Below are positions 13,616 to 45,521 of a stretch of 64,000 nucleotides of DNA, in pieces. The notes under the pieces were generated by a model. The model searched no databases. It had not been told where the DNA came from and worked only from the letters and a program-made list of their open reading frames with translations. Every line of letters starts with the position of its first letter. Positions within the stretch are counted from its first letter, which is position 1. A program made the translations under genes and the position numbers. The DNA lies in IMG/VR virus record IMGVR_UViG_3300042484_002457, positions 62,001 to 126,000 of that record. One strand, given 5' to 3'.

Positions 13616-13891
13616 ATGTTTACAGCAGACGCAATCATCGACACCGTTCAAACCAGTAAAAAGACTTTTGTCAAGACTTTTGTACAAAACGAAACAGCAG
13701 CCAAGGCCATGAATGAGTTCATTGACGCTCAAGCTGACTACACCAAGAAGGCAGCTCGAGTTGGAATGGACACATTTACTACACTCAGCACCGAAATGGT
13801 CAAAGCTGGTCAGAACGCTATGAAATTTGACTACACCAAATTTGGTGAAGGCATCATGAAAGCTTACACAGCTACCGCAGCCAAAAAGTAA
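13616..13891 (+). CDS. Phasin-like protein
   Basis: Small Ala/Thr/Lys-rich amphipathic helical protein; AGGAGA RBS; 5' hairpin ataggac...gtcctat at 13559-13586. Confidence 0.5.
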   Translation: MFTADAIIDTVQTSKKTFVKTFVQNETAAKAMNEFIDAQADYTKKAARVGMDTFTTLSTEMVKAGQNAMKFDYTKFGEGIMKAYTATAAKK

Positions 13892-13909
13892 TACTCAAGT
13901 GTTACATTT

Positions 13910-13937
13910 AGAGCCCCGCAAGGGGCTTTTCTTTTGG
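13910..13937 (+). terminator. Intrinsic terminator, copy 1 of a 28-bp direct repeat
   Basis: AGCCCC-GCAA-GGGGCT followed by a T-tract; identical to 15051-15078. Confidence 0.9.
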
Positions 13938-13953
13938 CAAAATTGTTGTGTGT

Positions 13954-13971
13954 TTGTAACAAAATTGTAAC
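13954..13971 (+). promoter_or_regulatory. Pho box
   Basis: TTGTAAC-AAAA-TTGTAAC, an 11-bp-period direct repeat resembling CTGTCAT-AAAA-CTGTCAT, upstream of pstS. Confidence 0.7.
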
Positions 13972-14017
13972 ACATTTTGACCTAAATACATGTGTCACTA
14001 ACACAAGGAGACTCACA

Positions 14018-15022
14018 GTGAAAAAACTATTTGCTATTCTCGTAGCCGCAGTAACAATTTCTGCACAGGCTGCAGACATCACAGGGGCAGGTGCCACCTT
14101 CCCTTATCCAATCTATGCCAAGTGGGCTGAAGGCTACAAAAAAGCCACAGGCACTGGTATGAACTATCAAAGTATCGGATCATCGGGCGGCATTCGTCAA
14201 ATCAACGCAAAGACTGTGGACTTTGGTGCCACAGATGCTCCAGTAAGCGGTGAAAATTTGGACAAGCAAGGGCAAGTACAGTTTCCTGCAATCATTGGCG
14301 GAACAGTTCCTGTTGTTAATCTAGATGGTTTTAAACCAGGTGAACTACGCATCACAGGACCAGTCATGGCCGAAGTGTTCTTGGGCACGATCAATCGGTG
14401 GAATGATCCCAAACTTGTAGCATTGAATCCAGGTAAGACATTGCCCAACACAGAAATCACCATTGTACATCGTGCTGATGGTTCAGGTACAACATTCAAC
14501 TGGACAGACTATCTTGCCACAGTAAGCCCAGAGTGGCTACAACGTGTGGGTCGTGGTGCCGCAGTCAAGTGGCCAGCAGCCACGTCAGTAGGTGGCAAAG
14601 GCAACGAAGGTGTGGCTGCCAACGTGAACCGCATCAAAGGTTCAATTGGTTATGTAGAGTATGCTTATGTCAAGAAAAACAACATGACATTCCTGCAACT
14701 ACAAAATCGATCAGGACGGTATGTTAGTCCAGATGATTCAACATTTGCCGCAGCCGCAGATGGTGCTGATTGGTTCTCAGTTCCTGGTATGGGATTGAGC
14801 ATTGTGGATCAACGTAATCCTGCGGCTTGGCCAGTGAGTTCAGCAAGTTTTATCATCATGTACAAGACCCCTGCCAACAAGGCCAACAGTGACGAAGTGT
14901 TAAAATTCTTTGACTGGGCATTTAAGAATGGCAAGAAAGATGCTGCTGACTTGGACTATGTGGCATTACCTGACACGTTGACACGTCAGATCCGTGAGCG
15001 TGTTTGGACACAGATCAAGTAA
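14018..15022 (+). CDS. pstS: Phosphate ABC transporter substrate-binding protein
   Basis: GTG start after AAGGAG; signal peptide; GAGATFP, YQSIGSSGG, RADGSGTT, IGYVE. Confidence 0.97.
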   Translation: MKKLFAILVAAVTISAQAADITGAGATFPYPIYAKWAEGYKKATGTGMNYQSIGSSGGIRQINAKTVDFGATDAPVSGENLDKQGQVQFPAIIGGTVPVVNLDGFKPGELRITGPVMAEVFLGTINRWNDPKLVALNPGKTLPNTEITIVHRADGSGTTFNWTDYLATVSPEWLQRVGRGAAVKWPAATSVGGKGNEGVAANVNRIKGSIGYVEYAYVKKNNMTFLQLQNRSGRYVSPDDSTFAAAADGADWFSVPGMGLSIVDQRNPAAWPVSSASFIIMYKTPANKANSDEVLKFFDWAFKNGKKDAADLDYVALPDTLTRQIRERVWTQIK

Positions 15023-15050
15023 CCAGCAAGTATACAAAAGTACTACAACA

Positions 15051-15078
15051 AGAGCCCCGCAAGGGGCTTTTCTTTTGG
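15051..15078 (+). terminator. Intrinsic terminator, copy 2
   Basis: Identical to 13910-13937. Confidence 0.9.
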
Positions 15079-15107
15079 TTGACTCAAAATGCCCAATTTG
15101 CTACAAT
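15079..15107 (+). promoter_or_regulatory. Sigma70 early promoter (cassette family)
   Basis: TTGACT-17-TACAAT with the conserved cccaatttg spacer. Confidence 0.8.
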
Positions 15108-15135
15108 AGTGGCTTAACAACACACAGGAGTCACT

Positions 15136-15336: not shown

Positions 15337-15343
15337 AATGTTT

Positions 15344-15428
15344 GTAGTACTTGAGTACTACAAACATTTTGGTTGACTCGAAATGCCCAATTTGCTATAA
15401 TACATACATACACAGCAATAAACAGGAG
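15344..15428 (+). promoter_or_regulatory. Palindrome + sigma70 promoter + RBS cassette
   Basis: GTAGTACTTGAGTACTAC; TTGACT 15373; TATAAT 15396; AGGAG. Confidence 0.88.
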
Positions 15429-15431
15429 TAG

Positions 15432-15617: not shown

Positions 15618-15626
15618 GGAGTTGAT

Positions 15627-15836: not shown

Positions 15837-16072
15837 ACGAACGAATTCGAGAACTTGCTGAACAGGCTGGATTTTATTTTTACGATATGCACGATATTGA
15901 CGGCCAAGACTTAGGTGAATCTATTGAAGCGGATAAGTGGTCTGTTGCCGAAAAGTTCGCCGAGTTGATTGTGAAAGAATGTCAAACGGTTGTTGAATGG
16001 GCAATCAGTGTAGATTCTACAATCGACCGAGTGCCTATGTTGATCCAAGAACATTTCGGAGTTGAAGAATGA
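15833..16072 (+). CDS. HFGVEE-family microprotein 2
   Basis: MNERIRELA...EKFAELIVKEC...HFGVEE. Confidence 0.8.
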   Translation: MNERIRELAEQAGFYFYDMHDIDGQDLGESIEADKWSVAEKFAELIVKECQTVVEWAISVDSTIDRVPMLIQEHFGVEE

Positions 16073-16224
16073 ACCTACGTGAAATGATGACTGAGCGAGT
16101 CCTGTTTGCAGTTGATGAGGATGCCCTGGCCACAGAGTTCAGCATCAGCCCGGACGAGATTGCCACACTCAGCGATCTGGACTTCCTGGAACTGTTTGAA
16201 CAGGTCACTGGATTTAATGGTTAA
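16069..16224 (+). CDS. 51-aa acidic hypothetical protein (not in ORF track)
   Basis: Starts in the junction ATGA; MNLREMMTERVLFAVDEDAL... Confidence 0.65.
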   Translation: MNLREMMTERVLFAVDEDALATEFSISPDEIATLSDLDFLELFEQVTGFNG

Positions 16225-16250
16225 CAGAGCGTCCAAAAAGGAGTATTGAC

Positions 16251-16496
16251 ATGGGATGGGTAGTTTACGAGGTTGAGTCTGGTCGCATGATCAAGTATTA
16301 CAAAACGCCCAGCCCAGCCAAGTCTGAAGTAACACGACAGAAAAATTTTACCCGTGAAATGCAGGCTCAGTACCGTAACCATCGTGTTCGTGAGTACGCA
16401 GCCTGCTCATATCGTGACTATGAAGGTCAGTTGATGGGCCTGCGTGGTGCAGACTTTAAATTTTGGCAATTTTGCAACGCACAACCCAACACTTGA
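16251..16496 (+). CDS. Hypothetical protein
   Basis: AAGGAG RBS. Confidence 0.65.
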   Translation: MGWVVYEVESGRMIKYYKTPSPAKSEVTRQKNFTREMQAQYRNHRVREYAACSYRDYEGQLMGLRGADFKFWQFCNAQPNT

Positions 16497-16521
16497 CCAA
16501 TAATGCTTGTTTTGCTATAAT
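16493..16521 (+). promoter_or_regulatory. Sigma70 promoter
   Basis: TTGACC-17-TATAAT with extended TG; ATG 9 nt downstream. Confidence 0.8.
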
Positions 16522-16530
16522 TACACTGTT

Positions 16531-16680
16531 ATGAAGCCCATATCTTTTGTACTGCAACCACCACGTCAGCGTCGACATCAAGCACTGTTTGATTCGGACT
16601 TGCCGTTTCGTGGCCGTGCGGAACAGCCCAAAACAGTGTACAAACGCCAACCCAAACACCGAAAGACTGAACAGGAATAA
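16531..16680 (+). CDS. 49-aa ArfA-like protein (not in ORF track)
   Basis: ALFDSDLPFRGRAEQPKTVYKRQPKH resembles the ArfA core ALLHDPLFRQRVE...YMRKGKH. Confidence 0.55.
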   Translation: MKPISFVLQPPRQRRHQALFDSDLPFRGRAEQPKTVYKRQPKHRKTEQE

Positions 16681-16681
16681 C

Positions 16682-16909
16682 ATGACTGTACCAAACGAAC
16701 GCACCCGAGCAGTGATACATACCGAGCGGTTCTTGAGTGATCTCCTGGACCCAAAAAAGACGCCGCGAGTACCTCGTGCCATTCGACAACGTGCCAGTTC
16801 ATTGTTGAGACATTACCCCGGTGAGTTCCACATGAACACAATTGCGGATCGCGAAGATGCTGCTGATCACAGTTTGTCAATCAAGGTTTTTGGAAAGAGC
16901 TGGTCATGA
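16682..16909 (+). CDS. BPSL0761-like hypothetical protein
   Basis: MT.P.ERTRAV...FL..L...VP..IR..A..LLRHYP. Confidence 0.6.
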   Translation: MTVPNERTRAVIHTERFLSDLLDPKKTPRVPRAIRQRASSLLRHYPGEFHMNTIADREDAADHSLSIKVFGKSWS

Positions 16910-17145
16910 ACAAACGAATTCGAGAACTTCATATACAGGCGCAACAAGAGGCATGGAATGAACCAATCGATATTGAAAATTGTGCAGTAGAAGATATAAA
17001 AGGATTCAGTCAACAAGTTTACGAAAAGTTCGCTGAGTTGATTGTTCTCGATACAATTAAAAATTGTCGTGATATGTTTATGGTGAATAGTGTTAGTTGG
17101 AATCTCTTAAATGAGAAACTAGAACATTTCGGAGTTGAAGAATGA
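16906..17145 (+). CDS. HFGVEE-family microprotein 3
   Basis: MNKRIREL...EKFAELIV...HFGVEE. Confidence 0.8.
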   Translation: MNKRIRELHIQAQQEAWNEPIDIENCAVEDIKGFSQQVYEKFAELIVLDTIKNCRDMFMVNSVSWNLLNEKLEHFGVEE

Positions 17146-17372
17146 ACCAAGTTTTAGTAAACCTGCTGTCTAATCGAGCAGTAAGATTGGGTGAGCACTC
17201 TTGGCAATGGGCCGAGAAAAAGACTGGCAATCCTTCCTTGAAAAATTCTGTGACTTCTCGTATGTTTCGGTCCGATCTTGTAGAAGTGGTCGGTGCAGAA
17301 ATGAAACTTACTGCTATGGGTCGTATACAAGCAGAACAACATTTCGGAGTTGAGGAATGTTTAAGAAGCTAA
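17142..17372 (+). CDS. Unrelated ORF carrying the HFGVEE tail
   Basis: Bounded by two junction repeats; reads through HFGVEE into CLRS. Confidence 0.65.
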   Translation: MNQVLVNLLSNRAVRLGEHSWQWAEKKTGNPSLKNSVTSRMFRSDLVEVVGAEMKLTAMGRIQAEQHFGVEECLRS

Positions 17373-17587
17373 TTGACATATTCAAAGAGCCCGAGCATGG
17401 CATAGTGAAGTTGAGTTTTATTGCCCTGGACGAGAATGGAGAACCCTATGAGGATATTGCAACAATGCCATATCATACACAATACATTCAAAGTGATGTG
17501 GAAGCAAAGTTTGTGGCATTCATGAGTTTACGGAATCACCGAGTTGTTGAAATCACAATACTAGAAGTAATTAAAACAAGTGGATAA
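17357..17587 (+). CDS. Hypothetical protein, paralog of 25856..26119
   Basis: G.VKL.FIA.D...EPYED.AT.PY shared. Confidence 0.7.
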   Translation: MFKKLIDIFKEPEHGIVKLSFIALDENGEPYEDIATMPYHTQYIQSDVEAKFVAFMSLRNHRVVEITILEVIKTSG

Positions 17588-17591
17588 TATA

Positions 17592-17801
17592 ATGAACGAA
17601 CGAATTCAAAAACTTGCTAGAGAGGCTGCTTTGGCCGAAAGCTGGGGACCCGGAGTTTGGCAAACCACATTTACTGAAAAGTTCGCCGAGTTGATTGTGA
17701 AGGAAACCATGCAGGTTGTTGCTAACCAATTGCCTAGCAATCAGTATCTTGATGTAGCCCATGCAGTAATTGAGCATTATAAGGATGACGATGTTACTTG
17801 A
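17592..17801 (+). CDS. HFGVEE-family microprotein 4, tail replaced
   Basis: MNERIQKLA...EKFAELIVKE; ends EHYKDDDVT. Confidence 0.75.
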   Translation: MNERIQKLAREAALAESWGPGVWQTTFTEKFAELIVKETMQVVANQLPSNQYLDVAHAVIEHYKDDDVT

Positions 17802-17901
17802 AATTTTACTGTTTGTTATTGGAGTAATTGGTTTGATTTTGCTCTTTCGTTGGGTAGACAAGGTTAGAACCGATCCTTTAGACTACCCTCAGGATTATTA
17901 A
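17791..17901 (+). CDS. 36-aa single-TM protein (not in ORF track)
   Basis: MLLEILLFVIGVIGLILLFRWVDK...; AAGGA RBS. Confidence 0.5.
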   Translation: MLLEILLFVIGVIGLILLFRWVDKVRTDPLDYPQDY

Positions 17902-17922
17902 GAAACATTTCGGAGTTGAAGA

Positions 17923-18090
17923 ATGAAAATAACCATGACAGGTGAGCACGAAGGTAAATCTGTAACGATTGCCGTTTGGGAATATTCTCCCGAGATTGTT
18001 AAAGGCAATCCTATCGAAGTAGAAGAAAAATTATGGCTTGCTATCAAACAGCAAATGACCCACTACATTAAGAAGGTGATTGAAGAATGA
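17923..18090 (+). CDS. 55-aa hypothetical protein (not in ORF track)
   Basis: Starts in the junction repeat at 17904; ends ...IEE with ATGA overlap. Confidence 0.6.
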   Translation: MKITMTGEHEGKSVTIAVWEYSPEIVKGNPIEVEEKLWLAIKQQMTHYIKKVIEE

Positions 18091-18365
18091 ACAAACAACT
18101 GATTAGAGATTTAGCCATCACAGGTGGCATTTATGATTGTATTTGTGATCCTTACGACAAGTTAAAGAACGGTGATTACTACAGTAGTGTAATGGTTGAT
18201 TTGGAGCGTTTCGCTGAGAAGATTGTGAAAGAATGTACTGAACAAATCAAGACACAGGGTATCAGCGCCTCTAGTGAAGATTATGGCGATTATGAAATAG
18301 GATTTAACGCAGGGTTATTTCATGCTCTCTACACAATCAAACAACATTTCGGAGTTGAAGAATGA
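18087..18365 (+). CDS. HFGVEE-family microprotein 5
   Basis: ERFAEKIVKEC...HFGVEE. Confidence 0.8.
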   Translation: MNKQLIRDLAITGGIYDCICDPYDKLKNGDYYSSVMVDLERFAEKIVKECTEQIKTQGISASSEDYGDYEIGFNAGLFHALYTIKQHFGVEE

Positions 18366-18592
18366 ACGAACGAATTAAACAAATCACAGGACAGGTACTA
18401 GATGAAATAGTGCCCGAGACTTGGGTAGCGTTGGGCTACGACAAAATCAAAGAGATTCAAAACCGCACAGCCGAGTTGATTGTTCGGGAATGTGCCAAGT
18501 TTCTAGATGAGAATTCTGGCTATGATGAATGCAACAATTCTTGGCATCCTGAACCAGAAGATTTATTACAACATTTCGGAGTTGAACTATGA
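18362..18592 (+). CDS. HFGVEE-family microprotein 6
   Basis: MNERIK...AELIVREC...HFGVEL. Confidence 0.8.
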   Translation: MNERIKQITGQVLDEIVPETWVALGYDKIKEIQNRTAELIVRECAKFLDENSGYDECNNSWHPEPEDLLQHFGVEL

Positions 18593-18867: not shown

Positions 18868-19458
18868 ATGCAGGAATCAAAAATGACCACAGAAACAGAT
18901 GTTACCACAAGCCATGGGCAAGAGCTTGCAGATGCAGGTCTCATGGTACTCATGGGTGAGGTTGAAAACGATTCTATTAAACCTGTGATTGAATGGATCC
19001 TGTATGAAAATCATGTGAGCAAGAAAAAGCGACAAGAGCTATTGCTCATGATCTGTAGTGAAGGCGGAGATTTAAGTGCCGCCTTTGCCTTGATTGACGT
19101 GATGCGTAGCAGTCGTTTGCCTGTCAAAACAGTGGGACTGGGCCAAATTGGATCTGCTGGCTTGTTGATTTTTCTTGCTGGCACACCTGGTCGACGTGTG
19201 CTAACTCCCAACACCAGTATTCTAAGTCATCAGTTCAGCTGGGGCAGTGATGGCAAAGTACATGAACTGTTTGCTACCATGAAAGAGTTTGAGCTTACAC
19301 AAAAGCGCATGGTACAGCACTACAAAGAATGTACCGGGCTTGGTGAAGAAGAAATTCGCACAGCCTTGTTGCCACCCCATGATGTGTGGCTCACAGCAGA
19401 AGAAGCTCTTGCACTAAATGTGTGCGATGTAATCAGTCCAGCAATGCGTCAGGCTTGA
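18868..19458 (+). CDS. Divergent ClpP-like protease (peptidase S14)
   Basis: CSEGG, GQIGSAG (Ser), SHQ (His), HDVWLTAEEA (Asp). Alternative start at 18883. Confidence 0.85.
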   Translation: MQESKMTTETDVTTSHGQELADAGLMVLMGEVENDSIKPVIEWILYENHVSKKKRQELLLMICSEGGDLSAAFALIDVMRSSRLPVKTVGLGQIGSAGLLIFLAGTPGRRVLTPNTSILSHQFSWGSDGKVHELFATMKEFELTQKRMVQHYKECTGLGEEEIRTALLPPHDVWLTAEEALALNVCDVISPAMRQA

Positions 19459-21752: not shown

Positions 21753-22346
21753 ATGCCCAGTTTGATCCCCATGGTTGTTGAACAAACCTCAAAAGGCGAG
21801 CGCAGTTACGATATCTACAGTCGCTTGCTGAAAGATCGTGTGATCATGCTAGACACAGACGTTAACGAGCACACAGCCAGTTTGTTGGTTGCTCAGTTGT
21901 TGTTTCTTGAAAGCGAAAATCCTGACAAGGACATCAGTTTGTATATCAACAGCCCGGGTGGCAGTGTAACAGCAGGTATGGCCATTTATGATACCATGCA
22001 GTTTATCAAATGCGATGTGCAAACCATTGTGATGGGGCAAGCTGCCAGCATGGGTAGTCTGCTAAGTACAGCAGGAGCCCCAGGCAAACGCATGATGCTG
22101 CCCAATGCACGTCACATGATTCATCAACCATCAGGTGGCGCACGTGGCATGCAAAGTGACATTGAAATCAGCTACAACGAAATCACTTACTTGAAACGTC
22201 GACTAACTGAAATTTACGTCCGGCACAACACTGCTGGCAAAACCTATGATGACTTTGTGCGGGACATGGACCGTGACAAATTCATGAGCGCAGAACAAGC
22301 ACTTGAATACGGCTTGATTGATAAAATTATTGACCAACGTGGCTAA
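21753..22346 (+). CDS. clpP: ATP-dependent Clp protease proteolytic subunit
   Basis: [46 protein letters not shown]. Confidence 0.96.
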
Positions 22347-23628
22347 TTCTGAGATCTTCTGTAACACACCGTGGTACGAGCTACACATCTATTGGGATGG
22401 CAGCTTGGGTATCTGCTGCCAGGAAGATCACAAACTCTACGCTGGCACAGACTACAACATTGCCACCATGACCATTGCTGAGTGGTTCAACTCTGCTCCA
22501 GTGCAGCAATTTAGGCAAGCAATATTGGGCAATACTCCAGTGAGTGCATGCAGAAGATGTTATGTTGAAGAATCTCATGCCGGAAAAAGTCGCCGCTTGA
22601 AAAGCAATCAAAAAAGTGTGATTTTCATCCAGGCATTTCAAGAAAGCTTTGAACAAAGCCCATGGCGAAAGCACTTTGATTCGTCGGGACTGACTGCCAC
22701 ACAGCCTATTGACATACACGTGGACCTGGGCAACTACTGCAACTTGGCCTGCAAAATGTGCAACGCTCGGGCCAGTTCGCAAATTGCTGCCCAGGAAGTC
22801 AAGTGGGGTATTGAATCTAGTAGACCTTACCTGGGGCAAGACTGGACCAAAAATGCTGATACTTGGGCCAGCTTCAAGCAGCAATTGTTAAATATACCGG
22901 GCCTGAACAATATTCACTTCATGGGCGGTGAAACATTGTTGACTGATCGGTTTGAAGACTTGGTAGACTGCATGATTGAACATGGTCGGTTTGATCTGTG
23001 TTTTAGTTTTGTCACCAACGGCACAATTTTTCAACCTAAACTGATGGCCAAGCTGTCAAAGTTTCGTCGTGTGGGCATTGAAGTTAGCATAGAGACTGTG
23101 AGCGAACACAATGCCTATCAGCGACAGGGCACAGACACTGCCCAGGTGCTGGCCAACATTGAAAAATATCAAGAGTGGGACAACGGCTCCAACATCACCA
23201 TTACTCTTCGTCCAGCAATCAGTGCACTAACAATTGGTCACTATCACACTCTACTGGCGTATGCATTGGCCAATAAATTCATAATCAAAAGTTTGTTGGT
23301 AAACCGACCTGAATATCTAGATGTAAAGATTCTACCTGAATCAGCAAAAAGCACATATATTCAATACTATGAAAATATTTTGCAAGAACTTGAATATGTG
23401 TCAGTTAAACTAGACTATAACGAAAGTGATCCAAATAACTTTCGAGAAATAATAAAGCAACAAGCTCGGATGTGTATAAACATGCTGGGTCAAAACCAAC
23501 CAGGCAACATTGACCAGTTACAGAAACAGTTTGTTGAACATTGCAAAAAGTGGGATCAGGTCTACGGATACAATGCTGTAAAGCTTTATCCTGAACTTGC
23601 TGAGGTATTTGATCGATATGGCTACTAA
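22339..23628 (+). CDS. Radical SAM protein with N-terminal SPASM/twitch-like domain
   Basis: CNLACKMC and GGE; N-terminal C.PW...CC...CRRC. Confidence 0.88.
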
Positions 23629-24316: not shown

Positions 24317-24333
24317 TTATTGCAGTGCAGCAA
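24317..24333 (-). promoter_or_regulatory. PhaR-like box TTGCTGCACTGCAATAA
   Basis: TGC-N3-GCA palindrome directly upstream of the late promoter. Confidence 0.45.
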
Positions 24334-24382
24334 ATACTTGATTTTCTTGACAATCCCAGTTGTTTGCGTGTATAATATCAGT

Positions 24383-24829
24383 ATGCGTTTATTTTTAGAT
24401 ACCGAATTCAACGGCTTCGGCGGCCGACTTATATCCATGGCCCTGGTGCCCGAAAACTCCAAAACTCGGGAGTTTTATAAAGAAATTGAAATTCGAGACC
24501 AGTTAGAACCCTGGGTGCGAGATAATGTGGTTCCGCATTTGATTTTGATTCCCTGTTCGCATTGGGATTTTCAACAGGCTCTAGCACAGTACTTGTGGGA
24601 AGTAGGTGAATGTACCATTGTAGCAGACTGGCCTGATGATATCCGGTACTTTTGCGAGTCGTTAATTACTGGCCCAGGCATGATGATCAATATGTTACAC
24701 AATATTAAATTTGAACTGGATTGCAGTATCGAATACCAATCAGTAGTACCGCATAATGCTTTGCATGACGCCAGGGCCATACGCGACTGGTACCTACAGC
24801 GTGAACAGCGCCTGGCTCAACAAAAGTAG
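24383..24829 (+). CDS. DEDDh 3'-5' exoribonuclease (Rv2179c-like)
   Basis: FLDTEF...HNALHDA; promoter TTGACA...TATAAT upstream. Confidence 0.8.
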   Translation: MRLFLDTEFNGFGGRLISMALVPENSKTREFYKEIEIRDQLEPWVRDNVVPHLILIPCSHWDFQQALAQYLWEVGECTIVADWPDDIRYFCESLITGPGMMINMLHNIKFELDCSIEYQSVVPHNALHDARAIRDWYLQREQRLAQQK

Positions 24830-24908
24830 TACTCAAGTACTACAAAATTTCTGGTTGACCAAAATTGCCCAATTTGCTATAATATACACATAGCAAAGCA
24901 AAAAGGAG
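24826..24908 (+). promoter_or_regulatory. Palindrome + promoter + RBS cassette
   Basis: GTAGTACTCAAGTACTAC (contains the upstream TAG); TTGACC 24855; TATAAT 24878. Confidence 0.88.
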
Positions 24909-24914
24909 CCTGAA

Positions 24915-25202
24915 ATGACCAAGCAAGATCACACAGTGTACATCTACAAAACAGATCGTCGCACCAAGAGTGGTGAGCGTCTTGTCAGCACCACTGTTTG
25001 GCGCAACCGTGATGCAGCAGAAATGAAACGTGAAGTGCGTGAACTGCAATACGAACTTTGGCCTGTGAGCCGAGGCTTCCGTATTGAGTTCTTTCCCACA
25101 ATGGTCACTGTCAAAAACTTGATAACTGGCCAGGACATTGAAATTGACCGTGACACTCCCTGGTCGTGCAACCCTGCGTCAGAATCTTATTGGTCGAGGT
25201 AA
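24915..25202 (+). CDS. Hypothetical protein
   Basis: Bracketed by two cassettes; VKNL.TG..IEI..DTPW.C.PASE.YW. Confidence 0.75.
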   Translation: MTKQDHTVYIYKTDRRTKSGERLVSTTVWRNRDAAEMKREVRELQYELWPVSRGFRIEFFPTMVTVKNLITGQDIEIDRDTPWSCNPASESYWSR

Positions 25203-25280
25203 CACTTGAGTATTACAAATTTTGGTTGACCAGAATTTCCCAATTTGCTATAATATAGACATACAGTAACAAAACAGGAG
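25199..25280 (+). promoter_or_regulatory. Palindrome + promoter + RBS cassette
   Basis: GTAACACTTGAGTATTAC (contains the upstream TAA); TTGACC 25226; TATAAT 25249. Confidence 0.88.
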
Positions 25281-25286
25281 TCAACT

Positions 25287-25538
25287 ATGAAAGTTCAGCG
25301 TTTCAAACAAGCCCAGCGTTTTCGTGTTATTGTTGGTCCCGCATGTTTTTATGCCACCGCAAAGCAAATTCGCAATGGGGTTGGTGACTTTGTAAACTGC
25401 AATGCCGCAACCCAAAAGGCCCTGGAGACACTGGAATTTCAACGTAGCGGCGGCTATAAGAATGCTGGGGTGCTGGAGTTTTCAACCGGGCTTGCAGGTA
25501 CCTGGGAAGGTTTGCAAGTTCAACTCAACGTGGCTTAA
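25287..25538 (+). CDS. Hypothetical protein
   Basis: Cassette RBS. Confidence 0.7.
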   Translation: MKVQRFKQAQRFRVIVGPACFYATAKQIRNGVGDFVNCNAATQKALETLEFQRSGGYKNAGVLEFSTGLAGTWEGLQVQLNVA

Positions 25539-25863: not shown

Positions 25864-26119
25864 GTGGGTCAAAGAAATATACACCAAAGGCACAGTAAAG
25901 CTGAAGTTCATTGCCTACGATGACGCCAAACAGGGCGATGAAATTGAGCCTTACGAAGACGTGGCCACAATCCCATACGAAGGCAAATACCAAGAGTTTG
26001 TGATCAAAAGCAAGCTCAGGAATTTTATTCGTGCTACTCGGGATCACTTGGTTGTGGAAATGACCGTGATTGAACACGTTGAGAATGGCAAGGTGATTTA
26101 TGAAGCTGATCAAAACTGA
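25856..26119 (+). CDS. Hypothetical protein, paralog of 17357..17587
   Basis: Shared motif. Confidence 0.7.
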   Translation: MFEWVKEIYTKGTVKLKFIAYDDAKQGDEIEPYEDVATIPYEGKYQEFVIKSKLRNFIRATRDHLVVEMTVIEHVENGKVIYEADQN

Positions 26120-26128
26120 TAGCCAAAA

Positions 26129-26212
26129 GTAATACTTTATAGTACTACTTTTTCTGGTTGACCAAAATTTCCCAATTTGCTATAATATACACATAGCAAA
26201 GCAAAACAGGAG
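26129..26212 (+). promoter_or_regulatory. Palindrome + promoter + RBS cassette
   Basis: GTAATACTTTATAGTACTAC; TTGACC 26158; TATAAT 26181. Confidence 0.88.
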
Positions 26213-26218
26213 TCGAAG

Positions 26219-28656: not shown

Positions 28657-28923
28657 ATGCGTTTCAATGAAGATACCAAAACTTTCAAACTGTTCACAGC
28701 CTTGCGCACTGGCGAAGCTATCACTCCCGCTACTGCTGCCAAGCGGTTTGGCATCAAGAACATGAGTGCTGAAGTTAGCCGTGTTCGTGCTGGCGGTTTT
28801 GCAGTTTATAGTAACACCCGTGTGGCTGGCAACGGCGTGCGTGTGACCGAGTACCAAATGGGCAAGCCATCGCGAAAAATTATCGCTGCTGGTTATCGCG
28901 CTATGGCACTTGGTCTTGCTTGA
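28657..28923 (+). CDS. Winged-HTH-like protein
   Basis: L.TG..IT...A.KRFGI.N.SA.VS.VR..GF; AGGAGA RBS. Confidence 0.6.
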   Translation: MRFNEDTKTFKLFTALRTGEAITPATAAKRFGIKNMSAEVSRVRAGGFAVYSNTRVAGNGVRVTEYQMGKPSRKIIAAGYRAMALGLA

Positions 28924-28941
28924 TAAGTAGTTAGTACTACA

Positions 28942-28968
28942 AAGAAGCCCGCCATTGGCGGGCTTCTT
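28942..28968 (+). terminator. Stem-loop terminator followed by a sigma70 promoter
   Basis: aagaagcccgcc-att-ggcgggcttctt, then TTGACC...TATAAT. Confidence 0.8.
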
Positions 28969-29017
28969 CTTGACCATTTATACAAGACACTGTATAATAC
29001 ACATGTAAAGGAAAACC

Positions 29018-38456: not shown

Positions 38457-38678
38457 ATGAGCCAACTTGAACTGCATGGACGTCCCTGGACAGTGTTTGA
38501 TCCTGCCAATCAACAACACAGGGCTTGGTATCACGATTTTGTAAAAACTGGCACCTGGGGGCGGTGCCCAGTGCGGTTCGTAGTACCCGAAGATCATGGC
38601 AACTTGGTTACCATGATCCAACGCAACCTAGTGGCATACTATGTCACACAAGAATTTAAACGAACACGGAGAAAATAA
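38457..38678 (+). CDS. Hypothetical protein
   Basis: FDP.N.QHR.W...F.KT..WG.CP.RF. Confidence 0.7.
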   Translation: MSQLELHGRPWTVFDPANQQHRAWYHDFVKTGTWGRCPVRFVVPEDHGNLVTMIQRNLVAYYVTQEFKRTRRK

Positions 38679-39100
38679 TGTTAATGTTTGCATACGGTAT
38701 GAACACCAATCCCAAAGAGATGGCTCGACGTTGTCCGCAGGCTCGGAGCCTGGGTCATGCTCGACTTGTAAACCACAGCTTCCGGTTTGCGCAATATGCA
38801 GATGTGGAACCACAGTCGGGCAGTTTTGTAGAAGGGGTGTTGTGGGAGATCACTGAAGAATGCCTTCGTGCTCTGGACCAGTTAGAAGGTTACCCTGTTT
38901 ATTACAATCGTGTGGTGAGTTCTGTGGTGCATGAATCTAGAACCTATCATGCTCTAGTGTACCGCATGCAGCCAGGGCGCCGGGACTATGGGCCTACTCG
39001 TGACTACTATCGTTTGGTCACAGAAGGCTATCAAGCACATCGTGTGCCCACTGACCAGCTGGAAAATAGTGTAAACTATAGTACTACAAATTTTGGTTGA
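38678..39100 (+). CDS. Gamma-glutamylcyclotransferase (AIG2-like)
   Basis: FAYG.N, V.GVLWEI, LD.LEG.P..Y.R. Confidence 0.85.
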   Translation: MLMFAYGMNTNPKEMARRCPQARSLGHARLVNHSFRFAQYADVEPQSGSFVEGVLWEITEECLRALDQLEGYPVYYNRVVSSVVHESRTYHALVYRMQPGRRDYGPTRDYYRLVTEGYQAHRVPTDQLENSVNYSTTNFG

Positions 39101-39152
39101 CCAAAAACTCCCAATTTGCTATAATATACACATATACAGCAACAAACAGGAG
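39071..39152 (+). promoter_or_regulatory. Cassette with degenerate palindrome + promoter + RBS
   Basis: Right arm AGTACTAC; TTGACC 39097; TATAAT 39120. Confidence 0.85.
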
Positions 39153-39158
39153 TAAATT

Positions 39159-39608: not shown

Positions 39609-39997
39609 GCGGATATCAAACAATTTTGCGTATTCGACGCATTGAAGAAACTGTCGCCAAACTTGGATTCATGTTGGCCAATTCCCGGCATGGATGGGAC
39701 AACAGCAACCCTGACATGGTGGCCCTCAAGCCCCGTGACGATGATGCAGTGCCGGGCTACAGCCGAGATGCTGAAGTGTTTCGTGGTACCTTGGAAGAAC
39801 TGGAAGTTTGGTTGCGTGGTGTGGAGTGGGCACGAAGCTACGACCGTGTGCTTCGAATCAGCGACGACAAAAAGAGAGCCAAGTACGAGGATCGAGAGCG
39901 CCTGAGAATTGCAGAAATGCGCAAACGAGAAGAACAGAAAATGCTACTGGCTGTGCTAAAGGCGCCCGATCACGAAAACAGCCGGGTAAAAAAGTAA
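39605..39997 (+). CDS. Hypothetical protein
   Basis: ATGA-coupled; stop lies inside the palindrome. Confidence 0.7.
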   Translation: MSGYQTILRIRRIEETVAKLGFMLANSRHGWDNSNPDMVALKPRDDDAVPGYSRDAEVFRGTLEELEVWLRGVEWARSYDRVLRISDDKKRAKYEDRERLRIAEMRKREEQKMLLAVLKAPDHENSRVKK

Positions 39998-40076
39998 TAC
40001 TTTATAGTACTACTTTTCTGGTTGACTCAAAATGCCCAATTTGTTATAATATACACATAGCAAAGCAAAACAGGAG
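39994..40076 (+). promoter_or_regulatory. Palindrome + promoter + RBS cassette
   Basis: GTAATACTTTATAGTACTAC; TTGACT 40022; TATAAT 40045; near-identical to the 26129 copy. Confidence 0.9.
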
Positions 40077-40082
40077 CCAGAG

Positions 40083-40307
40083 ATGACCAAGCAATTCGTA
40101 CAAGTTAGTGCCAGCAAAGACAGTAACAATTTCATGCACTGTAGCAACCTGAGCCTGATGGCATATGATGGCATGACTGCCGATCAAGCCCTGTGTGAAT
40201 TGCTGGACATGGCTGATGAGTACACCTTGAAAGGTTACACCATCCAGTGGACTTTTCAAGATTTTGACGCAATCGATGAAGAAATGTACGGCGAATTATT
40301 TGCCTAA
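40083..40307 (+). CDS. Hypothetical protein
   Basis: Cassette RBS. Confidence 0.7.
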   Translation: MTKQFVQVSASKDSNNFMHCSNLSLMAYDGMTADQALCELLDMADEYTLKGYTIQWTFQDFDAIDEEMYGELFA

Positions 40308-40313
40308 GTTTAG

Positions 40314-40368
40314 TTGACCAAAATTTCCCAATTTGTTATAATATACACATAGCAAAGCAAAACAGGAG
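40314..40368 (+). promoter_or_regulatory. Cassette promoter + RBS without palindrome
   Basis: TTGACC-17-TATAAT-atacacatagcaaagcaaaacaggag. Confidence 0.88.
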
Positions 40369-40373
40369 TTGAT

Positions 40374-40586: not shown

Positions 40587-40844
40587 GTGATGAACATCGA
40601 AATTGAATACGACCTGTCCGGCAACGCGGCACCCGACTATGGCATGTACTCTGACATTGGCAATGCCGCGGTGCATGCCATTGTATTGGCTGCCCAATCT
40701 AACAAGATGACATGGGTCCAAACATTGCGAGCTCTGCGAGCTCTGGCAGAACAAGAACAGTTTGGCGAAGCCATGGACACCATGGTGCGTGAAATGGTGT
40801 ACAGTGCCCTGGGCATCAAAGACGAGTCGTTTTACGTGTTGTAA
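40587..40844 (+). CDS. Hypothetical protein
   Basis: YGMYSD.GN.AV...EA.DT.VRE; stop lies inside the palindrome. Confidence 0.7.
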   Translation: MMNIEIEYDLSGNAAPDYGMYSDIGNAAVHAIVLAAQSNKMTWVQTLRALRALAEQEQFGEAMDTMVREMVYSALGIKDESFYVL

Positions 40845-40921
40845 TACTTGAGTATTACTTTTTTTTGGTTGACCAGAATTTCCCAATTTGCTATAATAGA
40901 AGTATAGTAAGAAACAAGGAG
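40841..40921 (+). promoter_or_regulatory. Palindrome + promoter + RBS cassette
   Basis: GTAATACTTGAGTATTAC; TTGACC 40869; TATAAT 40892. Confidence 0.9.
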
Positions 40922-40927
40922 TTAAAG

Positions 40928-41710
40928 ATGTCAGGTTTTGTTGATGTGTCGGGTATGAGTTATCAAGATGTCAAGCGCATGAGTCAGCAAGATGATGTAG
41001 ATTATCAACCTCGTCATCCCATTGGATCTGCTCCTGCTCGTCGCAACACTGTGCTTCAAACTGGCCATAGCGTCAGCGATGTGTGGGCCGCAGCCTGTGC
41101 CGCTCAACGTGTGAATGGTGGTTACTACAAAGAATCCACCTACCTGTGGGACGAAAGTACTCATGTCAACAAACTTGACAAGCGCCGCAACCGCGACATC
41201 ATGATGGAGTTCCTGTACAACCCCGACCGACTCTTGGTTGAGGACGTTGAAGCAGGTGAACAGGCACATGACTTTCTGCAAAACGATCTTACCTTCCGTG
41301 CGCTCAAAGGCAAGCTCACTGAGTTTGACAGTGCCACCAGCAAGTGCCTGGCAGTGACAGATCAGTTTTACACTGTGCAACACCGCTACGAACTGGCTGT
41401 GGTTGCGGCTCTGCCTGCCAGCGCGGCTCGTAGTCAAGCACAACAAAATCAAGTTGAACGAGTGCGGTTTTCCAAAGGCGGCCTTATTGCTCAGCCCGGC
41501 GACAAAGTGTCGGCTCAAGTAGAAGTGCTGACTTCAGTTTACAGCAAGAATTACGGTGTGTACTGGATCAAGGGCATCACTGATCAAGACCAGCCAGTGT
41601 TCTTTAGTGCCAAAAAAGCACACAACACTGGCACTTGGCTCAGTGTAACAGGCACCGTTAAAGCACATCGCGATGATGTCACTCAACTCACTCGCGTCAA
41701 GGTGTTGTGA
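40928..41710 (+). CDS. Hypothetical protein with C-terminal OB-fold-like domain
   Basis: ...VTGTVKAH...TQLTRVK. Confidence 0.65.
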   Translation: MSGFVDVSGMSYQDVKRMSQQDDVDYQPRHPIGSAPARRNTVLQTGHSVSDVWAAACAAQRVNGGYYKESTYLWDESTHVNKLDKRRNRDIMMEFLYNPDRLLVEDVEAGEQAHDFLQNDLTFRALKGKLTEFDSATSKCLAVTDQFYTVQHRYELAVVAALPASAARSQAQQNQVERVRFSKGGLIAQPGDKVSAQVEVLTSVYSKNYGVYWIKGITDQDQPVFFSAKKAHNTGTWLSVTGTVKAHRDDVTQLTRVKVL

Positions 41711-42755: not shown

Positions 42756-42941
42756 ATGACACAACACGAACAACTGGTTTCCGCTTACGAAACTTACATT
42801 GCCGAAAACGAAAAATTCACCACCAAGGGCGTCAAGGCTTCAGCAGCCCGGGCTCGCAAGGCGCTACAAGAGATGAGCAAATGCATCAAAGAACGCCGCA
42901 AAGAAATCACTGCTGAGAAAGAAGCCTTGGCAGCAAAATGA
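42756..42941 (+). CDS. Hc1-like histone-like protein
   Basis: EKF..KG.KASA.RARKAL.E...IKE.RK; TTGACA-17-TATAAT and AAGGAG upstream. Confidence 0.7.
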   Translation: MTQHEQLVSAYETYIAENEKFTTKGVKASAARARKALQEMSKCIKERRKEITAEKEALAAK

Positions 42942-43132: not shown

Positions 43133-43565
43133 CATCTATTCTGACAACGATGTGATATCTGACACTGGTGAAAGCCTTTACATCAGTACTGGTGCTACTG
43201 GTGCTATTGGCGCTGCCGACTCAAATGCTTATTCATGGAATGCCAACAGTTCTATAGATTGGAACAATATCACTATTGGATCTTCCAATATTGCTGGCAC
43301 CAATGGTACCATGATTCGTCCGTCTGGACGTTTGGAACTTCAAGGTGAAGATGCTGACATAAAAATCAATGGTCGAAGTTTGATGGATGCTATTGATGCC
43401 CTTGAGCAGCGCCTTAACATTCTAGTACCTAATCCTGAGCTGGAAGCAGAATGGGATGAATTACGAGAGCTGGGCGAACGTTATAGAGCGTTGGAAAAAC
43501 AATGTACCGAGAAAGGCAACATGTGGAAAAAACTAAAGTCAATGCCACCACCAACCAAACCATGA
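43107..43565 (+). CDS. Hypothetical protein
   Basis: Low-complexity N-terminus, coiled-coil C-terminus. Confidence 0.7.
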   Translation: MSKNANTINIYSDNDVISDTGESLYISTGATGAIGAADSNAYSWNANSSIDWNNITIGSSNIAGTNGTMIRPSGRLELQGEDADIKINGRSLMDAIDALEQRLNILVPNPELEAEWDELRELGERYRALEKQCTEKGNMWKKLKSMPPPTKP

Positions 43566-44386
43566 AACCAAAACAACGTATCAATCACATTGTAAAGTGG
43601 TTGAAGCAGTATGCCAAGAGTGCCAAAATTGACACTTTTGTAGTGGGCATTTCTGGTGGGATCGACAGCTCAGTTGTGAGTGCCTTGTGTGCTCAAACTG
43701 GCTTAAAAACCATTGTGGTGCAGATGCCTATTCGTCAAAACAAACAGTTGGATAATCGCAGTAGCTTGCATGCAGGCTGGTTGTTGGAACGTTTCCCCCA
43801 AACAGTTACTCACATGAGCATGGATCTAACTCCAGTGTTCTCTGCGTTTGAAAAGAAGGTTGATCCTTTTTGCAGGATTGACGATGACACCTATGACACG
43901 TACAAATTGGCCAGTGCCAACTCTCGCAGTCGCCTGCGCATGATGACGCTGTATCAAATTGCACAATGTCATGGTGCCTTGGTTGTAGGAACCGGCAACC
44001 GGGTAGAAGACTTTGGTGTGGGCTTTTTTACCAAGTACGGCGATGGCGGAGTTGACCTCAGCCCCATTGGCGACTGTCTCAAAACACAAGTATGGGACAT
44101 GGGTCGCGAACTTGGTGTAGCACCAGAGATCATTGATGCTGCTCCTACTGATGGACTTTGGGCAGATGGTCGTACAGATGAAGATCAGATTGGCATGACT
44201 TACCCTGATCTAGAACGCATGATGGCCTTGGACTTCTTAAAACGTGCCAAGGCAGTGGACTCTGACATGCCCGGTAGCTCCAAGTTGTCAGCAGACGATC
44301 GCAAAAAGCTAACACGTTATCAAGAGCTTCGTGCTAGAAACATGCACAAAATGCAACCAATCCCGGTTTGCAAGTTTGACCAATAA
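43562..44386 (+). CDS. nadE: NH3-dependent NAD+ synthetase
   Basis: GISGGIDS, N.RSR.RM, GTGN, FFTKYGDGG, PT.GLW...DE. Confidence 0.93.
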   Translation: MKPKQRINHIVKWLKQYAKSAKIDTFVVGISGGIDSSVVSALCAQTGLKTIVVQMPIRQNKQLDNRSSLHAGWLLERFPQTVTHMSMDLTPVFSAFEKKVDPFCRIDDDTYDTYKLASANSRSRLRMMTLYQIAQCHGALVVGTGNRVEDFGVGFFTKYGDGGVDLSPIGDCLKTQVWDMGRELGVAPEIIDAAPTDGLWADGRTDEDQIGMTYPDLERMMALDFLKRAKAVDSDMPGSSKLSADDRKKLTRYQELRARNMHKMQPIPVCKFDQ

Positions 44387-44498
44387 GTCAAACTGTGCTA
44401 TAATGATATTGTGGGATAACTACCCACTTATTGGCCAAAACGTACCATTTTGTGGGGCTATGCTTCACAATATGGTACCACTTACTAAGTAACAGCCT

Positions 44499-45068
44499 AT
44501 GAACGCAAATGTAACCTCAACAACTTTGCAAGTTGCAACCTGGAGCTCACGCCTACTAAAAGTCTTTGGACTATGGGTAGTGTTGGCTGCTGTGTTTGTG
44601 ACCAGTACTGCAAAACTCGACTACCTACGACAAGCAAACAACAACATGTCTGACAATTATGTGTCAGCAGCTCAAAGAACCAAAGAGCTAGAATGTTTGA
44701 CACGCAACATTTACTGGGAGGCGGCCAGTGAGCCGTTTGAAGGCAAAGTTGGTGTGGCGCAGGTTACCCTGAATCGAATGGAGTCTGGAAAATTTCCCAA
44801 TTCTGTTTGCGGGGTAGTGTACCAGAAAAACGTATTCTACGAAAAAGTAGTTTGTCAGTTTAGCTGGTACTGCGAAGGCAACCATACCACTCGTGCAATC
44901 CACAAACCCTTGTGGAATGAGTCAGAGATTGTGGCCAAAAAAGTGTTGTTGGAAGGATTTAGATTGCCTGGTCTAGAAGATGCACTTTTTTACCACGCAA
45001 CATACATATCGCCGGGCTGGAAGCGAGAAAAGATCCAAACTATTGGACAACACATTTTTTACAGATAG
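44499..45068 (+). CDS. Cell-wall hydrolase, SleB/Hydrolase_2 family
   Basis: CL..NIYWEA..E...G...VAQVT.NR, CQFSW, IGQHIFY; N-terminal TM helix. Confidence 0.9.
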   Translation: MNANVTSTTLQVATWSSRLLKVFGLWVVLAAVFVTSTAKLDYLRQANNNMSDNYVSAAQRTKELECLTRNIYWEAASEPFEGKVGVAQVTLNRMESGKFPNSVCGVVYQKNVFYEKVVCQFSWYCEGNHTTRAIHKPLWNESEIVAKKVLLEGFRLPGLEDALFYHATYISPGWKREKIQTIGQHIFYR

Positions 45069-45078
45069 TCCTACTTAC

Positions 45079-45099
45079 GGAAATCAGATTCTGATTTCC
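45079..45099. repeat. 21-bp perfect palindrome GGAAATCAGA-T-TCTGATTTCC
   Basis: Read directly; intergenic. Confidence 0.85.
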
Positions 45100-45169
45100 T
45101 CCGTTTTACATCTTCAGAATCTTTGCGTCGATACCCTGCTTCAGATAACTTTTTTTACGGAGACCGCTC

Positions 45170-45478
45170 ATGAACATCAACAACATTGTACCCACAGTTC
45201 GAAACTTTTTTGCTGAACACTTTGGAAAAATCTCAGCAGAGACCCTGGGCTGGTTGGCAGTGATTGTGATCCACGCTGCCACCATTCCCACCTTGTTGGC
45301 CTTGATGTCTGGACTCAGCGACCGTGCCCCACAGCTGGACATGGTATTGTTTATGTGGGCAGGCCTGGTCTTGATGTTTTTACGTGCCGTGGTGCTGAAA
45401 GACATGCTGAACATCATCACAATTGGTCTGGGCTTTATTGTGCAAGCCGTGCTCATGGCCTTGCTACTGTTTCGGTAA
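45170..45478 (+). CDS. 3-TM membrane protein, SemiSWEET/PQ-loop-like
   Basis: LGWLA...IP; three hydrophobic helices. Confidence 0.45.
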   Translation: MNINNIVPTVRNFFAEHFGKISAETLGWLAVIVIHAATIPTLLALMSGLSDRAPQLDMVLFMWAGLVLMFLRAVVLKDMLNIITIGLGFIVQAVLMALLLFR

Positions 45479-45521
45479 TACTCTAGTAGTACTTGACCAA
45501 TAATCCTGGATATGCTATAAT
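45475..45521 (+). promoter_or_regulatory. Degenerate palindrome + sigma70 promoter
   Basis: GTAATACTCTAGTAGTAC (contains the upstream TAA); TTGACC 45493; TATAAT 45516. Confidence 0.8.

What the first reader, a model, noticed from the sequence alone, without database searches (positions are those of the whole stretch)
13888..45521. Portable palindrome-promoter-RBS cassette whose palindrome supplies the upstream stop codon
Seen: a ~85-bp unit [GTA(G/A)TACT-N2/4-AGTA(C/T)TAC]-N10-11-TTGAC(C/T)-..cccaatttg.-TATAAT-...AGGAG occurs at 15344, 24826, 25199, 26129, 39071, 39994 and 40841, with partial copies at 13888, 15079, 40314 and 45475. In six cases the left arm is the upstream ORF's stop codon (ORFs ending 13891, 24829, 25202, 39997, 40844, 45478), so short gene blocks are exactly bracketed by the element. 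Known: promoter/stem-loop cassettes (PeSLs) mediate modular shuffling in T4-type phages, and integron cassette stop codons often lie in attC. Inference: a cassette boundary for acquiring or deleting early genes, plus a protein-binding site next to the -35.
Basis: partly seen in the sequence, partly recalled or inferred. Interest (0 to 1): 0.75.

Follow-up and report, generated by a model that had tools for sequence, protein, structure and literature searches.

The report
Stem-loop plus early-promoter cassettes in lake phage
The repeated 87-90-base unit is real and is best read as the jumbo-phage counterpart of the 'PeSL' stem-loop/early-promoter cassettes known from T4-type phages, which punctuate small early genes and act as homology patches for swapping them; it extends a known idea to a new, uncultured lake-phage lineage and is not a new mechanism.

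Summary
Observation confirmed. [quoted passage not shown] Each has an AT-rich palindrome, GG-TTGACC, a 17-nt spacer ending CCCAATTTG(C/T), TATAAT, a conserved leader and AGGAG. Four partial copies sit at the stated coordinates. Chance expectation is about zero. The window belongs to a 209.5-kb, about 58%-complete lake-water jumbo phage record. The promoter core recurs in over 120 IMG/VR contigs. The GTARTACT palindrome is lineage-specific: 9 copies here, 5 in the nearest long relative, 0-2 in four others. The stop codon lies in the left arm in 6 of 9 window copies and in 28 of 50 independent upstream-gene families (p about 8e-4). Relatives show gain, loss and relocation of promoter-led genes, including a 292-bp promoter-to-promoter event. 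Cassettes evolve in concert within genomes. [quoted passage not shown] The 'protein site next to -35' idea is not supported. Palindrome-to-(-35) distance varies from 0 to 45 nt, GC-rich terminators often intervene, and the loop varies from 2 to 6 nt. Breakpoint enrichment at cassettes could not be shown, and near-identical strains show no variation. New member of a known kind; moderate interest.

The parts
13888..13936 (+). Palindrome (13888-13905; its TAA is the stop of the 91-aa ORF 13616-13891), then a GC-rich terminator; no promoter
15030..15135 (+). Degenerate palindrome (right arm AGTACTAC 15039-15046), second copy of the same terminator, promoter 15079-15107 (TACAAT), leader, RBS; ATG at 15136
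15344..15431 (+). Full cassette, 88 nt; the palindrome extends to a 16-bp stem; promoter 15373-15401
24826..24914 (+). Full cassette, 89 nt; its TAG is the stop of the RNase H-like ORF ending at 24829; promoter 24855-24883
25199..25286 (+). Full cassette, 88 nt; its TAA is the stop of the mobile 95-aa ORF 24915-25202; the palindrome is the exact reverse complement of the one at 13888
26129..26218 (+). Full cassette, 90 nt, 4-nt loop, flanked by an A run and a T run; the upstream ORF ends 10 nt before it
28925..29017 (+).
39071..39158 (+). Cassette with a degenerate 17-nt palindrome; the upstream ORF stops at the TGA inside the -35 hexamer (39098-39100)
39994..40082 (+). Full cassette, 89 nt; its TAA is the stop of the ORF ending at 39997
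40083..40313 (+). 74-aa ORFan unit lying between the promoters at 40022 and 40314; absent in relative G005 and apparently in L099, with the junction inside the shared promoter/leader
40314..40373 (+). Promoter, leader and RBS without a palindrome; 42 nt identical to the 40022 copy
40841..40927 (+). Full cassette, 87 nt; its TAA is the stop of the ORF ending at 40844. Together with the 260-aa ORF 40928-41710 it is missing from G005, with the left breakpoint at the palindrome start
45475..45527 (+). Class-2 copy: GTAATACT-CT-AGTAGTAC abuts TTGACC; its TAA is the stop of the ORF ending at 45478; the ATG at 45528 lies 6 nt after -10 (leaderless-looking)

Best explanation
These are PeSL-type composite regulatory cassettes of an uncultured freshwater jumbo myophage. 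Each unit runs from the stop codon of one small early gene to the ATG of the next. It has three modules. First, a lineage-specific AT-rich stem-loop, GTARTACT-loop-AGTAYTAC, often within A5...T5 runs, that marks the 3' end of the upstream unit. Second, a near-consensus sigma-70 promoter with an extended -10 (TGnTATAAT). Third, a conserved A/C-rich leader with AGGAG. The promoter drives host-RNA-polymerase early transcription of the downstream ORFan(s) (inferred). The stem-loop most likely acts as a weak, roughly bidirectional attenuator or insulator, backed up by a real GC-rich terminator where strong termination is needed (inferred). Because copies are kept nearly identical within a genome, the promoter/leader stretch of 40-60 nt serves as a homology patch. 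General phage recombination uses these patches to delete, insert or move promoter-led gene units (shown by comparison for several events; the mechanism is inferred). The stop codon falls in the left arm because the arm contains TAR and the genome is compacted, so the element begins where the gene ends.
For: Near-consensus promoters lie only on the + strand: 30 against 0, with about 0.1 expected (expectation from my own base-composition calculation). TG precedes -10. Cassette length is fixed at 87-90 nt. The distance from left-arm start to -35 is 27-29 nt in all 51 class-1 instances, whatever the loop length. The same promoter core occurs in over 120 IMG/VR contigs. At the same position upstream of -35, other lineages carry a different stem-loop (GTGTTG..CAACAC, loops 6-8) or a GC-rich hairpin. 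Palindrome counts are lineage-specific. Concerted evolution: the cassette upstream of the g26219 homologue is 0.87-0.97 identical to a paralogue in the same locus, against a median of 0.58-0.75 to its orthologues. Shuffling: the 95-aa gene 24915-25202 occurs in at least 12 contexts, usually with a promoter upstream and a palindrome plus promoter downstream. The g40083 unit shows promoter-to-promoter loss or gain. G005 has an extra gene between two promoters at the 39097 site. L002 has a two-gene insertion whose left junction is in a promoter. Identity drops from 97% to 62% across cassette 45475 in L142, with the high-identity segment ending at the -10. Cassette genes are ORFans. All of this matches the published PeSL definition and crossover sites (PMC2839356, PMC4122927).
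Against: The stem-loops are weak as RNA. Mean core dG is -3.6 (sense) and -4.5 (antisense) kcal/mol, against -10 to -16 for the window's GC-rich terminators. Only about half have a T run. A hairpin overlapping a translated stop codon should terminate poorly (general knowledge). So the 'effective terminator' property of PeSLs is doubtful here. Covariation at the variable stem position is weak (odds ratio about 4; p 0.02, or 0.10 after dereplication), and A.C mismatches are common in the sense strand. Gene adjacency in relatives is lost about as often at cassette-free junctions, roughly 18% kept in both classes. In my count for the G000/G005 pair, only about 9 of 24 breakpoint ends touch a cassette element, against about 27% of junctions that carry one. 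Dozens of contigs carrying the exact proteins, from more than ten lake samples, all keep the same gene order. No transcription data could be obtained.
Confidence: 0.6

Rival explanations
1. The palindrome is a sequence-specific binding site for a dimeric phage or host protein, either a regulator of the early promoters or a recombination helper. Its conservation would reflect protein contacts, not structure.
For: The primary sequence of both arms is conserved as GTARTACT across 50 gene families. The central R/Y varies almost independently between the arms. By contrast, the GC-rich terminators in the same phages vary freely in stem sequence. 75% of copies have a 2-nt spacer, placing half-site centres 10 bp apart. 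Left-arm-to-(-35) distance is fixed at 27-29 nt in class 1. Arbiol et al. speculated the same for PeSL stems.
Against: Arm spacing varies (2, 4, 5 or 6 nt). Distance to -35 falls in three classes, and in 29 of 89 instances it is 20 nt or more; where listed, these have a GC-rich terminator in between. Relatives with the same promoter have no palindrome. The non-contact spacer and the leader are conserved just as strongly, which concerted evolution explains. The only HTH-like early gene checked (28657-28923) is also present in palindrome-free relatives.
Confidence: 0.15
2. The cassettes are transcription-unit punctuation only. They are alike because a strong promoter, a good leader and a hairpin are each selected. 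Gene shuffling in this region is ordinary illegitimate or homologous recombination that does not depend on them.
For: Adjacency is lost equally at cassette-free junctions. Several G000/G005 indels, such as 25538 to about 26600 and 16680 to 18589, have no cassette at either end. No structural variation appears among near-identical strains.
Against: The promoter-to-promoter 292-bp event has a hybrid cassette in G005. High-identity segments end at -35, -10 or the leader. Within-genome homogenisation covers the spacer and leader, which selection for promoter strength alone does not predict.
Confidence: 0.15
3. This is a site-specific gene-cassette system in which the palindrome is the recombination site, like integron attC or REP/RAYT elements.
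For: The stop codon lies in the palindrome, as in many attC sites. Two homology breaks fall at the palindrome: its start at 40841 and its centre at 25199. Loop orientation (TG or CA) is random with respect to transcription. The element starts with GTAG/GTAA and ends with CTAC/TTAC, which recalls the REP tetranucleotide (from memory; not tested).
Against: No Phage_integrase or Y1_Tnp match in the 209-kb record. Every unit carries its own promoter. The palindrome is only 18-21 nt. Most junctions lie in the promoter/leader.
Confidence: 0.05

Closest known systems
PeSLs (promoter-early stem-loops) of the T4-type phages RB49/phi1, PST/T4 and nt-1/KVP40 (Arbiol 2010, PMC2839356; Comeau 2014, PMC4122927)
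   Same: A composite unit running from the upstream stop codon through a stem-loop, an AT-rich tract, a sigma-70-like early promoter and a Shine-Dalgarno site to the ATG. Many copies cluster among small ORFans. The stem consensus is lineage-specific. The units associate with indels and replacements. Crossovers fall between -10 and ATG or in the stem-loop.
   Different: The host genome is a jumbo phage of about 350 kb whose polymerase is nearest to Rak2-/Atu_ph07-type phages, not a Tevenvirinae member. The stem is an 18-21-nt AT-rich near-perfect palindrome with a very weak predicted RNA hairpin. It is often followed by a separate GC-rich terminator before the promoter. Module length is fixed (27-29 nt from stop codon to -35). 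Terminator activity and mini-circles are untested.
AT-rich stem-loop/early-promoter elements at the T-even internal-protein loci (Repoila 1994, as described in PMC2839356)
   Same: Weak AT-rich stem-loops beside early promoters that flank highly variable small genes.
   Different: Those use T4-type early promoters and stems of variable size. Here the promoters are near-consensus sigma-70 and the stem sequence is conserved.
Lambdoid phage 'morons' (a promoter-gene-terminator unit inserted between genes; from my own knowledge)
   Same: Self-contained transcription units that come and go between neighbouring genes. The PstS-like gene at 14018-15022, lying between duplicated terminators, looks like one.
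   Different: Morons do not share a repeated, homogenised linker sequence.
Integron attC sites and REP/BIME elements
   Same: Repeated imperfect palindromes at the 3' ends of genes, sometimes containing the stop codon.
   Different: No integrase or RAYT was found. These cassettes carry their own promoters, and the palindrome is much shorter than attC.

Membership tests
PeSL | Strong sigma-70-like early promoter | tested here: met
   TTGACY, 17-nt spacer, TGnTATAAT; 11/12 match; all on one strand. Promoter activity itself was not assayed.
PeSL | Stem-loop-forming sequence within or just upstream of the promoter | tested here: met
   An inverted repeat of 7-8 bp (up to 16 bp) lies 0-11 nt upstream of -35 in 60 of 89 instances.
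PeSL | [quoted passage not shown] | tested here: met
   87-90 nt from stop codon to ATG in 7 window copies. The stop lies inside the left arm in 28 of 50 families.
PeSL | Many copies clustered in hyperplastic regions of small ORFans | tested here: met
   Clusters at 24.8-26.2 kb and 39.0-40.9 kb. The flanked genes have no PHROG or Pfam family. Relatives show clustered, strand-pure copies.
PeSL | Indels or replacements between relatives with junctions in or at the element | tested here: inconclusive
   Clear cases exist. Enrichment over cassette-free junctions was not demonstrable, and near-identical strains show no variation.
PeSL | The stem-loop is an effective transcription terminator | not testable with these tools
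   Predicted to be weak: core dG about -4 kcal/mol, a T run in about half of copies. RNA runs were uninformative.
PeSL | Mini-circle formation between neighbouring elements | not testable with these tools
   The joints seen in metagenome contigs have short sides (25-31 nt) and are ambiguous because of repeats.
PeSL | Resides in a T4-like myovirus | tested here: inconclusive
   The family-B polymerase is nearest to Phosso, Atu_ph07 and Rak2-like jumbo phages at 43-52%. Gp23 and Portal_T4 were not found, but the record is only 58% complete and the controls did not respond.
Integron gene cassette / attC | Cognate tyrosine recombinase (IntI) | tested here: not met
   No PF00589 match in the 209.5 kb, while the control genomes all responded. 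42% of the genome is unseen.
REP / RAYT | Associated Y1 (HUH) transposase | tested here: not met
   No PF01797 match.
Canonical intrinsic terminator | GC-rich stem followed by a U tract | tested here: not met
   Only one palindrome, on the minus strand, passes the terminator scan. Separate GC-rich terminators follow many palindromes.
Dimeric-repressor operator | Fixed half-site spacing and fixed position relative to the promoter | tested here: not met
   Spacers of 2, 4, 5 and 6 nt; three distance classes from 0 to 45 nt.

The most novel reading that the evidence does not exclude
The conserved GTARTACT arms are read by a still-unidentified protein, either a recombination helper/nuclease or an insulator. 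This protein would define cassette ends exactly at stop codons, giving this jumbo-phage lineage a targeted, integron-like way to capture and shed promoter-led early genes.
Probability: 0.1. Interest if true: 0.8.

Novelty: new member of a known kind. Interest (0 to 1): 0.4.

Why it matters
The finding extends the PeSL concept, so far described for cultured T4-type phages, to a widespread clade of uncultured freshwater jumbo phages. It provides a very specific promoter signature, TTGAC-N8-CCCAATTTGYTATAAT, that tags early genes in metagenomic contigs of this clade. It also marks which small ORFans behave as movable, self-expressed units, and these are candidates for host-takeover or anti-defence functions. 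The weak, sequence-conserved palindrome that coexists with true terminators is the one part that the published model does not fully explain.

Tried and rejected
- Isolated-phage database: the 6-kb window stretch found nothing by megablast and the 94-nt cassette found nothing by sensitive blastn.
- Rfam over the whole window: no family.
- RNA evidence: only two runs hold 6-7% of the words, and the laid contigs show no usable transcript ends. One apparent joint (27720 to 25199) is just the 13888 locus in reverse.
- Host inference from the promoter pattern in 596 Gb of bacterial genomes: 14 scattered hits, of which only one (a contig binned as Haliscomenobacter) is cassette-like, probably a mis-binned phage.
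- Binder candidate: the HTH_39-like gene at 28657-28923 is also present in palindrome-free relatives.
- ESM Atlas and Pfam for the mobile 95-aa gene and nine other cassette genes: nothing significant.
- Junction-by-junction adjacency statistics across distant relatives: saturated, about 18% kept everywhere.
- Strain-level contexts and cassette polymorphisms: invariant apart from a T8/T7 run and one SNP.
- LexA-, TrpR- and Fis-like readings of the palindrome: considered from memory and dropped, because the spacing varies and key bases differ.


Full report
**What the window is.** The window is bases 62001-126000 of a single 209,543-bp IMG/VR virus record (44.6% GC). The record is linear and CheckV rates it 58% complete. 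It comes from lake-water metagenomes, and many lake samples hold it. Its family-B DNA polymerase is closest to the jumbo myophages Phosso, Atu_ph07 and the Rak2-like group, at 43-52% identity. Related IMG/VR contigs of 317-361 kb exist, some complete. No isolated phage matches at the DNA level.

**Checking the observation.**
- Seven full copies run from the palindrome start to the base before the ATG and are 87-90 nt long.
- Each full copy contains GTARYACT, a 2- or 4-nt loop, AGTRYTAC, 9-11 nt ending in GG, TTGACY, a 17-nt spacer ending CCCAATTTG(C/T), TATAAT, a leader of about 30 nt and AGGAG.
- Shuffles of the window expect 0.02 palindromes and 0.00 promoter cores, against 6 and 9 found.
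- The six ORFs said to end in the left arm do so.
- The copy at 39071 has lost one base. Its upstream ORF reads through the palindrome and stops at the TGA of the -35 hexamer.
- Genome-wide there are 9 palindromes and 30 TTGAC-N18-TATAAT sites. All 30 sites are on the + strand.

**How widespread each part is.** The promoter, spacer and leader are therefore a signature of a large uncultured clade. The palindrome is narrower. It occurs 9 times in this record, 5 times in the nearest long relative (G005, 300 kb, collinear at 68-91% identity), twice in G001, and not at all in three complete genomes of 345-361 kb. At the same position upstream of -35, other lineages carry a different conserved stem-loop (GTGTTG..CAACAC, loops of 6-8 nt), a GC-rich hairpin, or nothing. 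Lineage-specific stem consensus is exactly what Comeau et al. describe for PeSLs.

**Anatomy of the palindrome across 89 instances in 50 upstream-gene families.**
- Loop length, in the 79 instances counted before orienting them by promoter: 2 nt in 59, and 4, 5 or 6 nt in 8, 9 and 3.
- Distance from right arm to -35 falls in three classes: 0-1 nt; 7-11 nt; and 20-45 nt. Where listed, the third class has a canonical GC-rich terminator between palindrome and promoter.
- The order is always stop codon/palindrome, then terminator, then promoter. The palindrome therefore belongs to the end of the upstream unit and is not set at a fixed distance from the promoter.
- In the 7-11 class, the distance from left-arm start to -35 is 27-29 nt in all 51 cases, whatever the loop length. 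The module has a fixed length.
- The variable stem position shows only weak covariation (odds ratio about 4; p 0.02, or 0.10 with one instance per family). A.C mismatches are frequent in the sense strand.
- Predicted RNA hairpins are weak. Mean core dG is -3.6 (sense) and -4.5 (antisense) kcal/mol. Window copies range from -1.3 to -8, apart from -15.5 at 15344. The window's GC-rich terminators score -10 to -16.
- About half of instances have an A run before the palindrome and about half have a T run after it.

**The stop codon.** With one instance per family, the longest open frame ends at the TAR of the left arm in 28 of 50, against 1/3 expected (binomial p about 8e-4). In the window the figure is 6 of 9 (p about 0.04, my calculation). 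Homologues of the 95-aa gene that lack the palindrome still end in ...ATG TAA, and similarity breaks immediately after TAA. The 'G TAA' is therefore the gene's own end, and the exchangeable part starts there. The published PeSL definition also begins at the upstream stop codon. The feature is real, but it is the expected edge of such a cassette in a compact genome. TTGAC and TATAAT also contain TGA and TAA, so any incoming frame is closed.

**Evidence for shuffling.**
- The 95-aa gene (24915-25202) appears in at least a dozen different neighbourhoods at 31-94% identity. It usually has a promoter upstream and a palindrome plus promoter downstream.
- In L002 this gene and a second gene are inserted after a promoter that in this genome drives another gene.
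- Against G005, the 74-aa unit at 40083-40313 is absent. G005's single cassette is a hybrid of the 39994 and 40314 copies, which share 42 identical nt.
- G005 has an extra small gene between two promoters at the 39097 site.
- The cassette at 40841 and the following 260-aa gene are missing together from G005, with the left break at the palindrome start.
- Similarity to G005 begins at the centre of the 25199 palindrome.
- High-identity mosaic segments end at -35, at -10 or at the leader.
- The cassette upstream of the g26219 homologue is often 0.87-0.97 identical to a paralogue in the same locus, but only 0.58-0.75 (median) to its orthologues elsewhere. This indicates concerted evolution.

**Limits of the shuffling evidence.**
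- Adjacency in distant relatives is lost as often at cassette-free junctions.
- Several G000/G005 indels have no cassette at either end.
- The look-ups for three exact proteins read 13-17 contigs each, from many lake samples, and all keep the same gene order. The cassettes differ only by a T8/T7 run and one SNP.
- Metagenome joints were ambiguous, and RNA data were uninformative.

**Interpretation.** The best fit is a PeSL-type cassette. The promoter/leader acts as the recombination patch, and the palindrome is the lineage's stem-loop module.
- A protein operator next to -35 is disfavoured by the variable spacing, the variable distance and the palindrome's absence from relatives that have the same promoter. 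The conserved arm sequence keeps that idea alive at low probability.
- A site-specific integron- or REP-like system has no enzyme in the available sequence.

Noticed in passing
window 13909-15078: A PstS-like phosphate-binding protein gene (14018-15022; PF12849, E 1e-33) sits between two direct copies of the same 28-nt GC-rich terminator. Relatives G005, L082 and L115 have the upstream gene, palindrome, terminator and promoter with no pstS. It therefore looks like an auxiliary metabolic gene inserted at the terminator.
   Followed up: partly
window 13955-13988: Upstream of the pstS-like gene are two 7-nt direct repeats, TGTAACA, spaced 11 nt apart. They lie 10 nt before TAAATA. This architecture resembles a Pho box (comparison from memory; not tested).
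   Followed up: no
window 45522-45530; also 16522-16533 and genome position 194231: ATG start codons lie only 6-9 nt after TATAAT, suggesting leaderless or near-leaderless early mRNAs. G005 has another case, a small membrane protein gene between two promoters.
   Followed up: partly
window 18883-19458 and 21753-22346: There are two ClpP-like protease genes. The same early region also holds a radical SAM gene (22318-23628), an NAD synthase gene (43502-44386), a GGACT-like gene (38678-39100) and an RNase H-like gene (24320-24829).
   Followed up: partly
window 13888-13905 vs 25199-25216: The two palindromes are exact reverse complements of each other. Across relatives the central dinucleotide occurs as TG or CA about equally often with respect to transcription direction, so the loop orientation flips.
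   Followed up: partly
window 28657-28923 and 42756-42941: Two small early genes have weak DNA-binding-type hits recorded in precomputed annotations: HTH_39 and the histone-like Hc1. The HTH_39-like gene is conserved at 60-95% in relatives with and without palindromes.
   Followed up: partly
L007:6165-7574 vs window 15950-17359: A 1.4-kb stretch of early genes is 97.5% identical to a contig whose flanks match this genome at only 64-79% and lie about 110 kb away here. This indicates a recent exchange of an early-gene block between diverged phages.
   Followed up: no
window 24667-25454 and 26046-26242: Metagenome contig depth rises 5- to 50-fold exactly over the promoter cores, and loose ends pile up at their edges. 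Many co-occurring genomes therefore share just this 40-70-nt stretch.
   Followed up: partly
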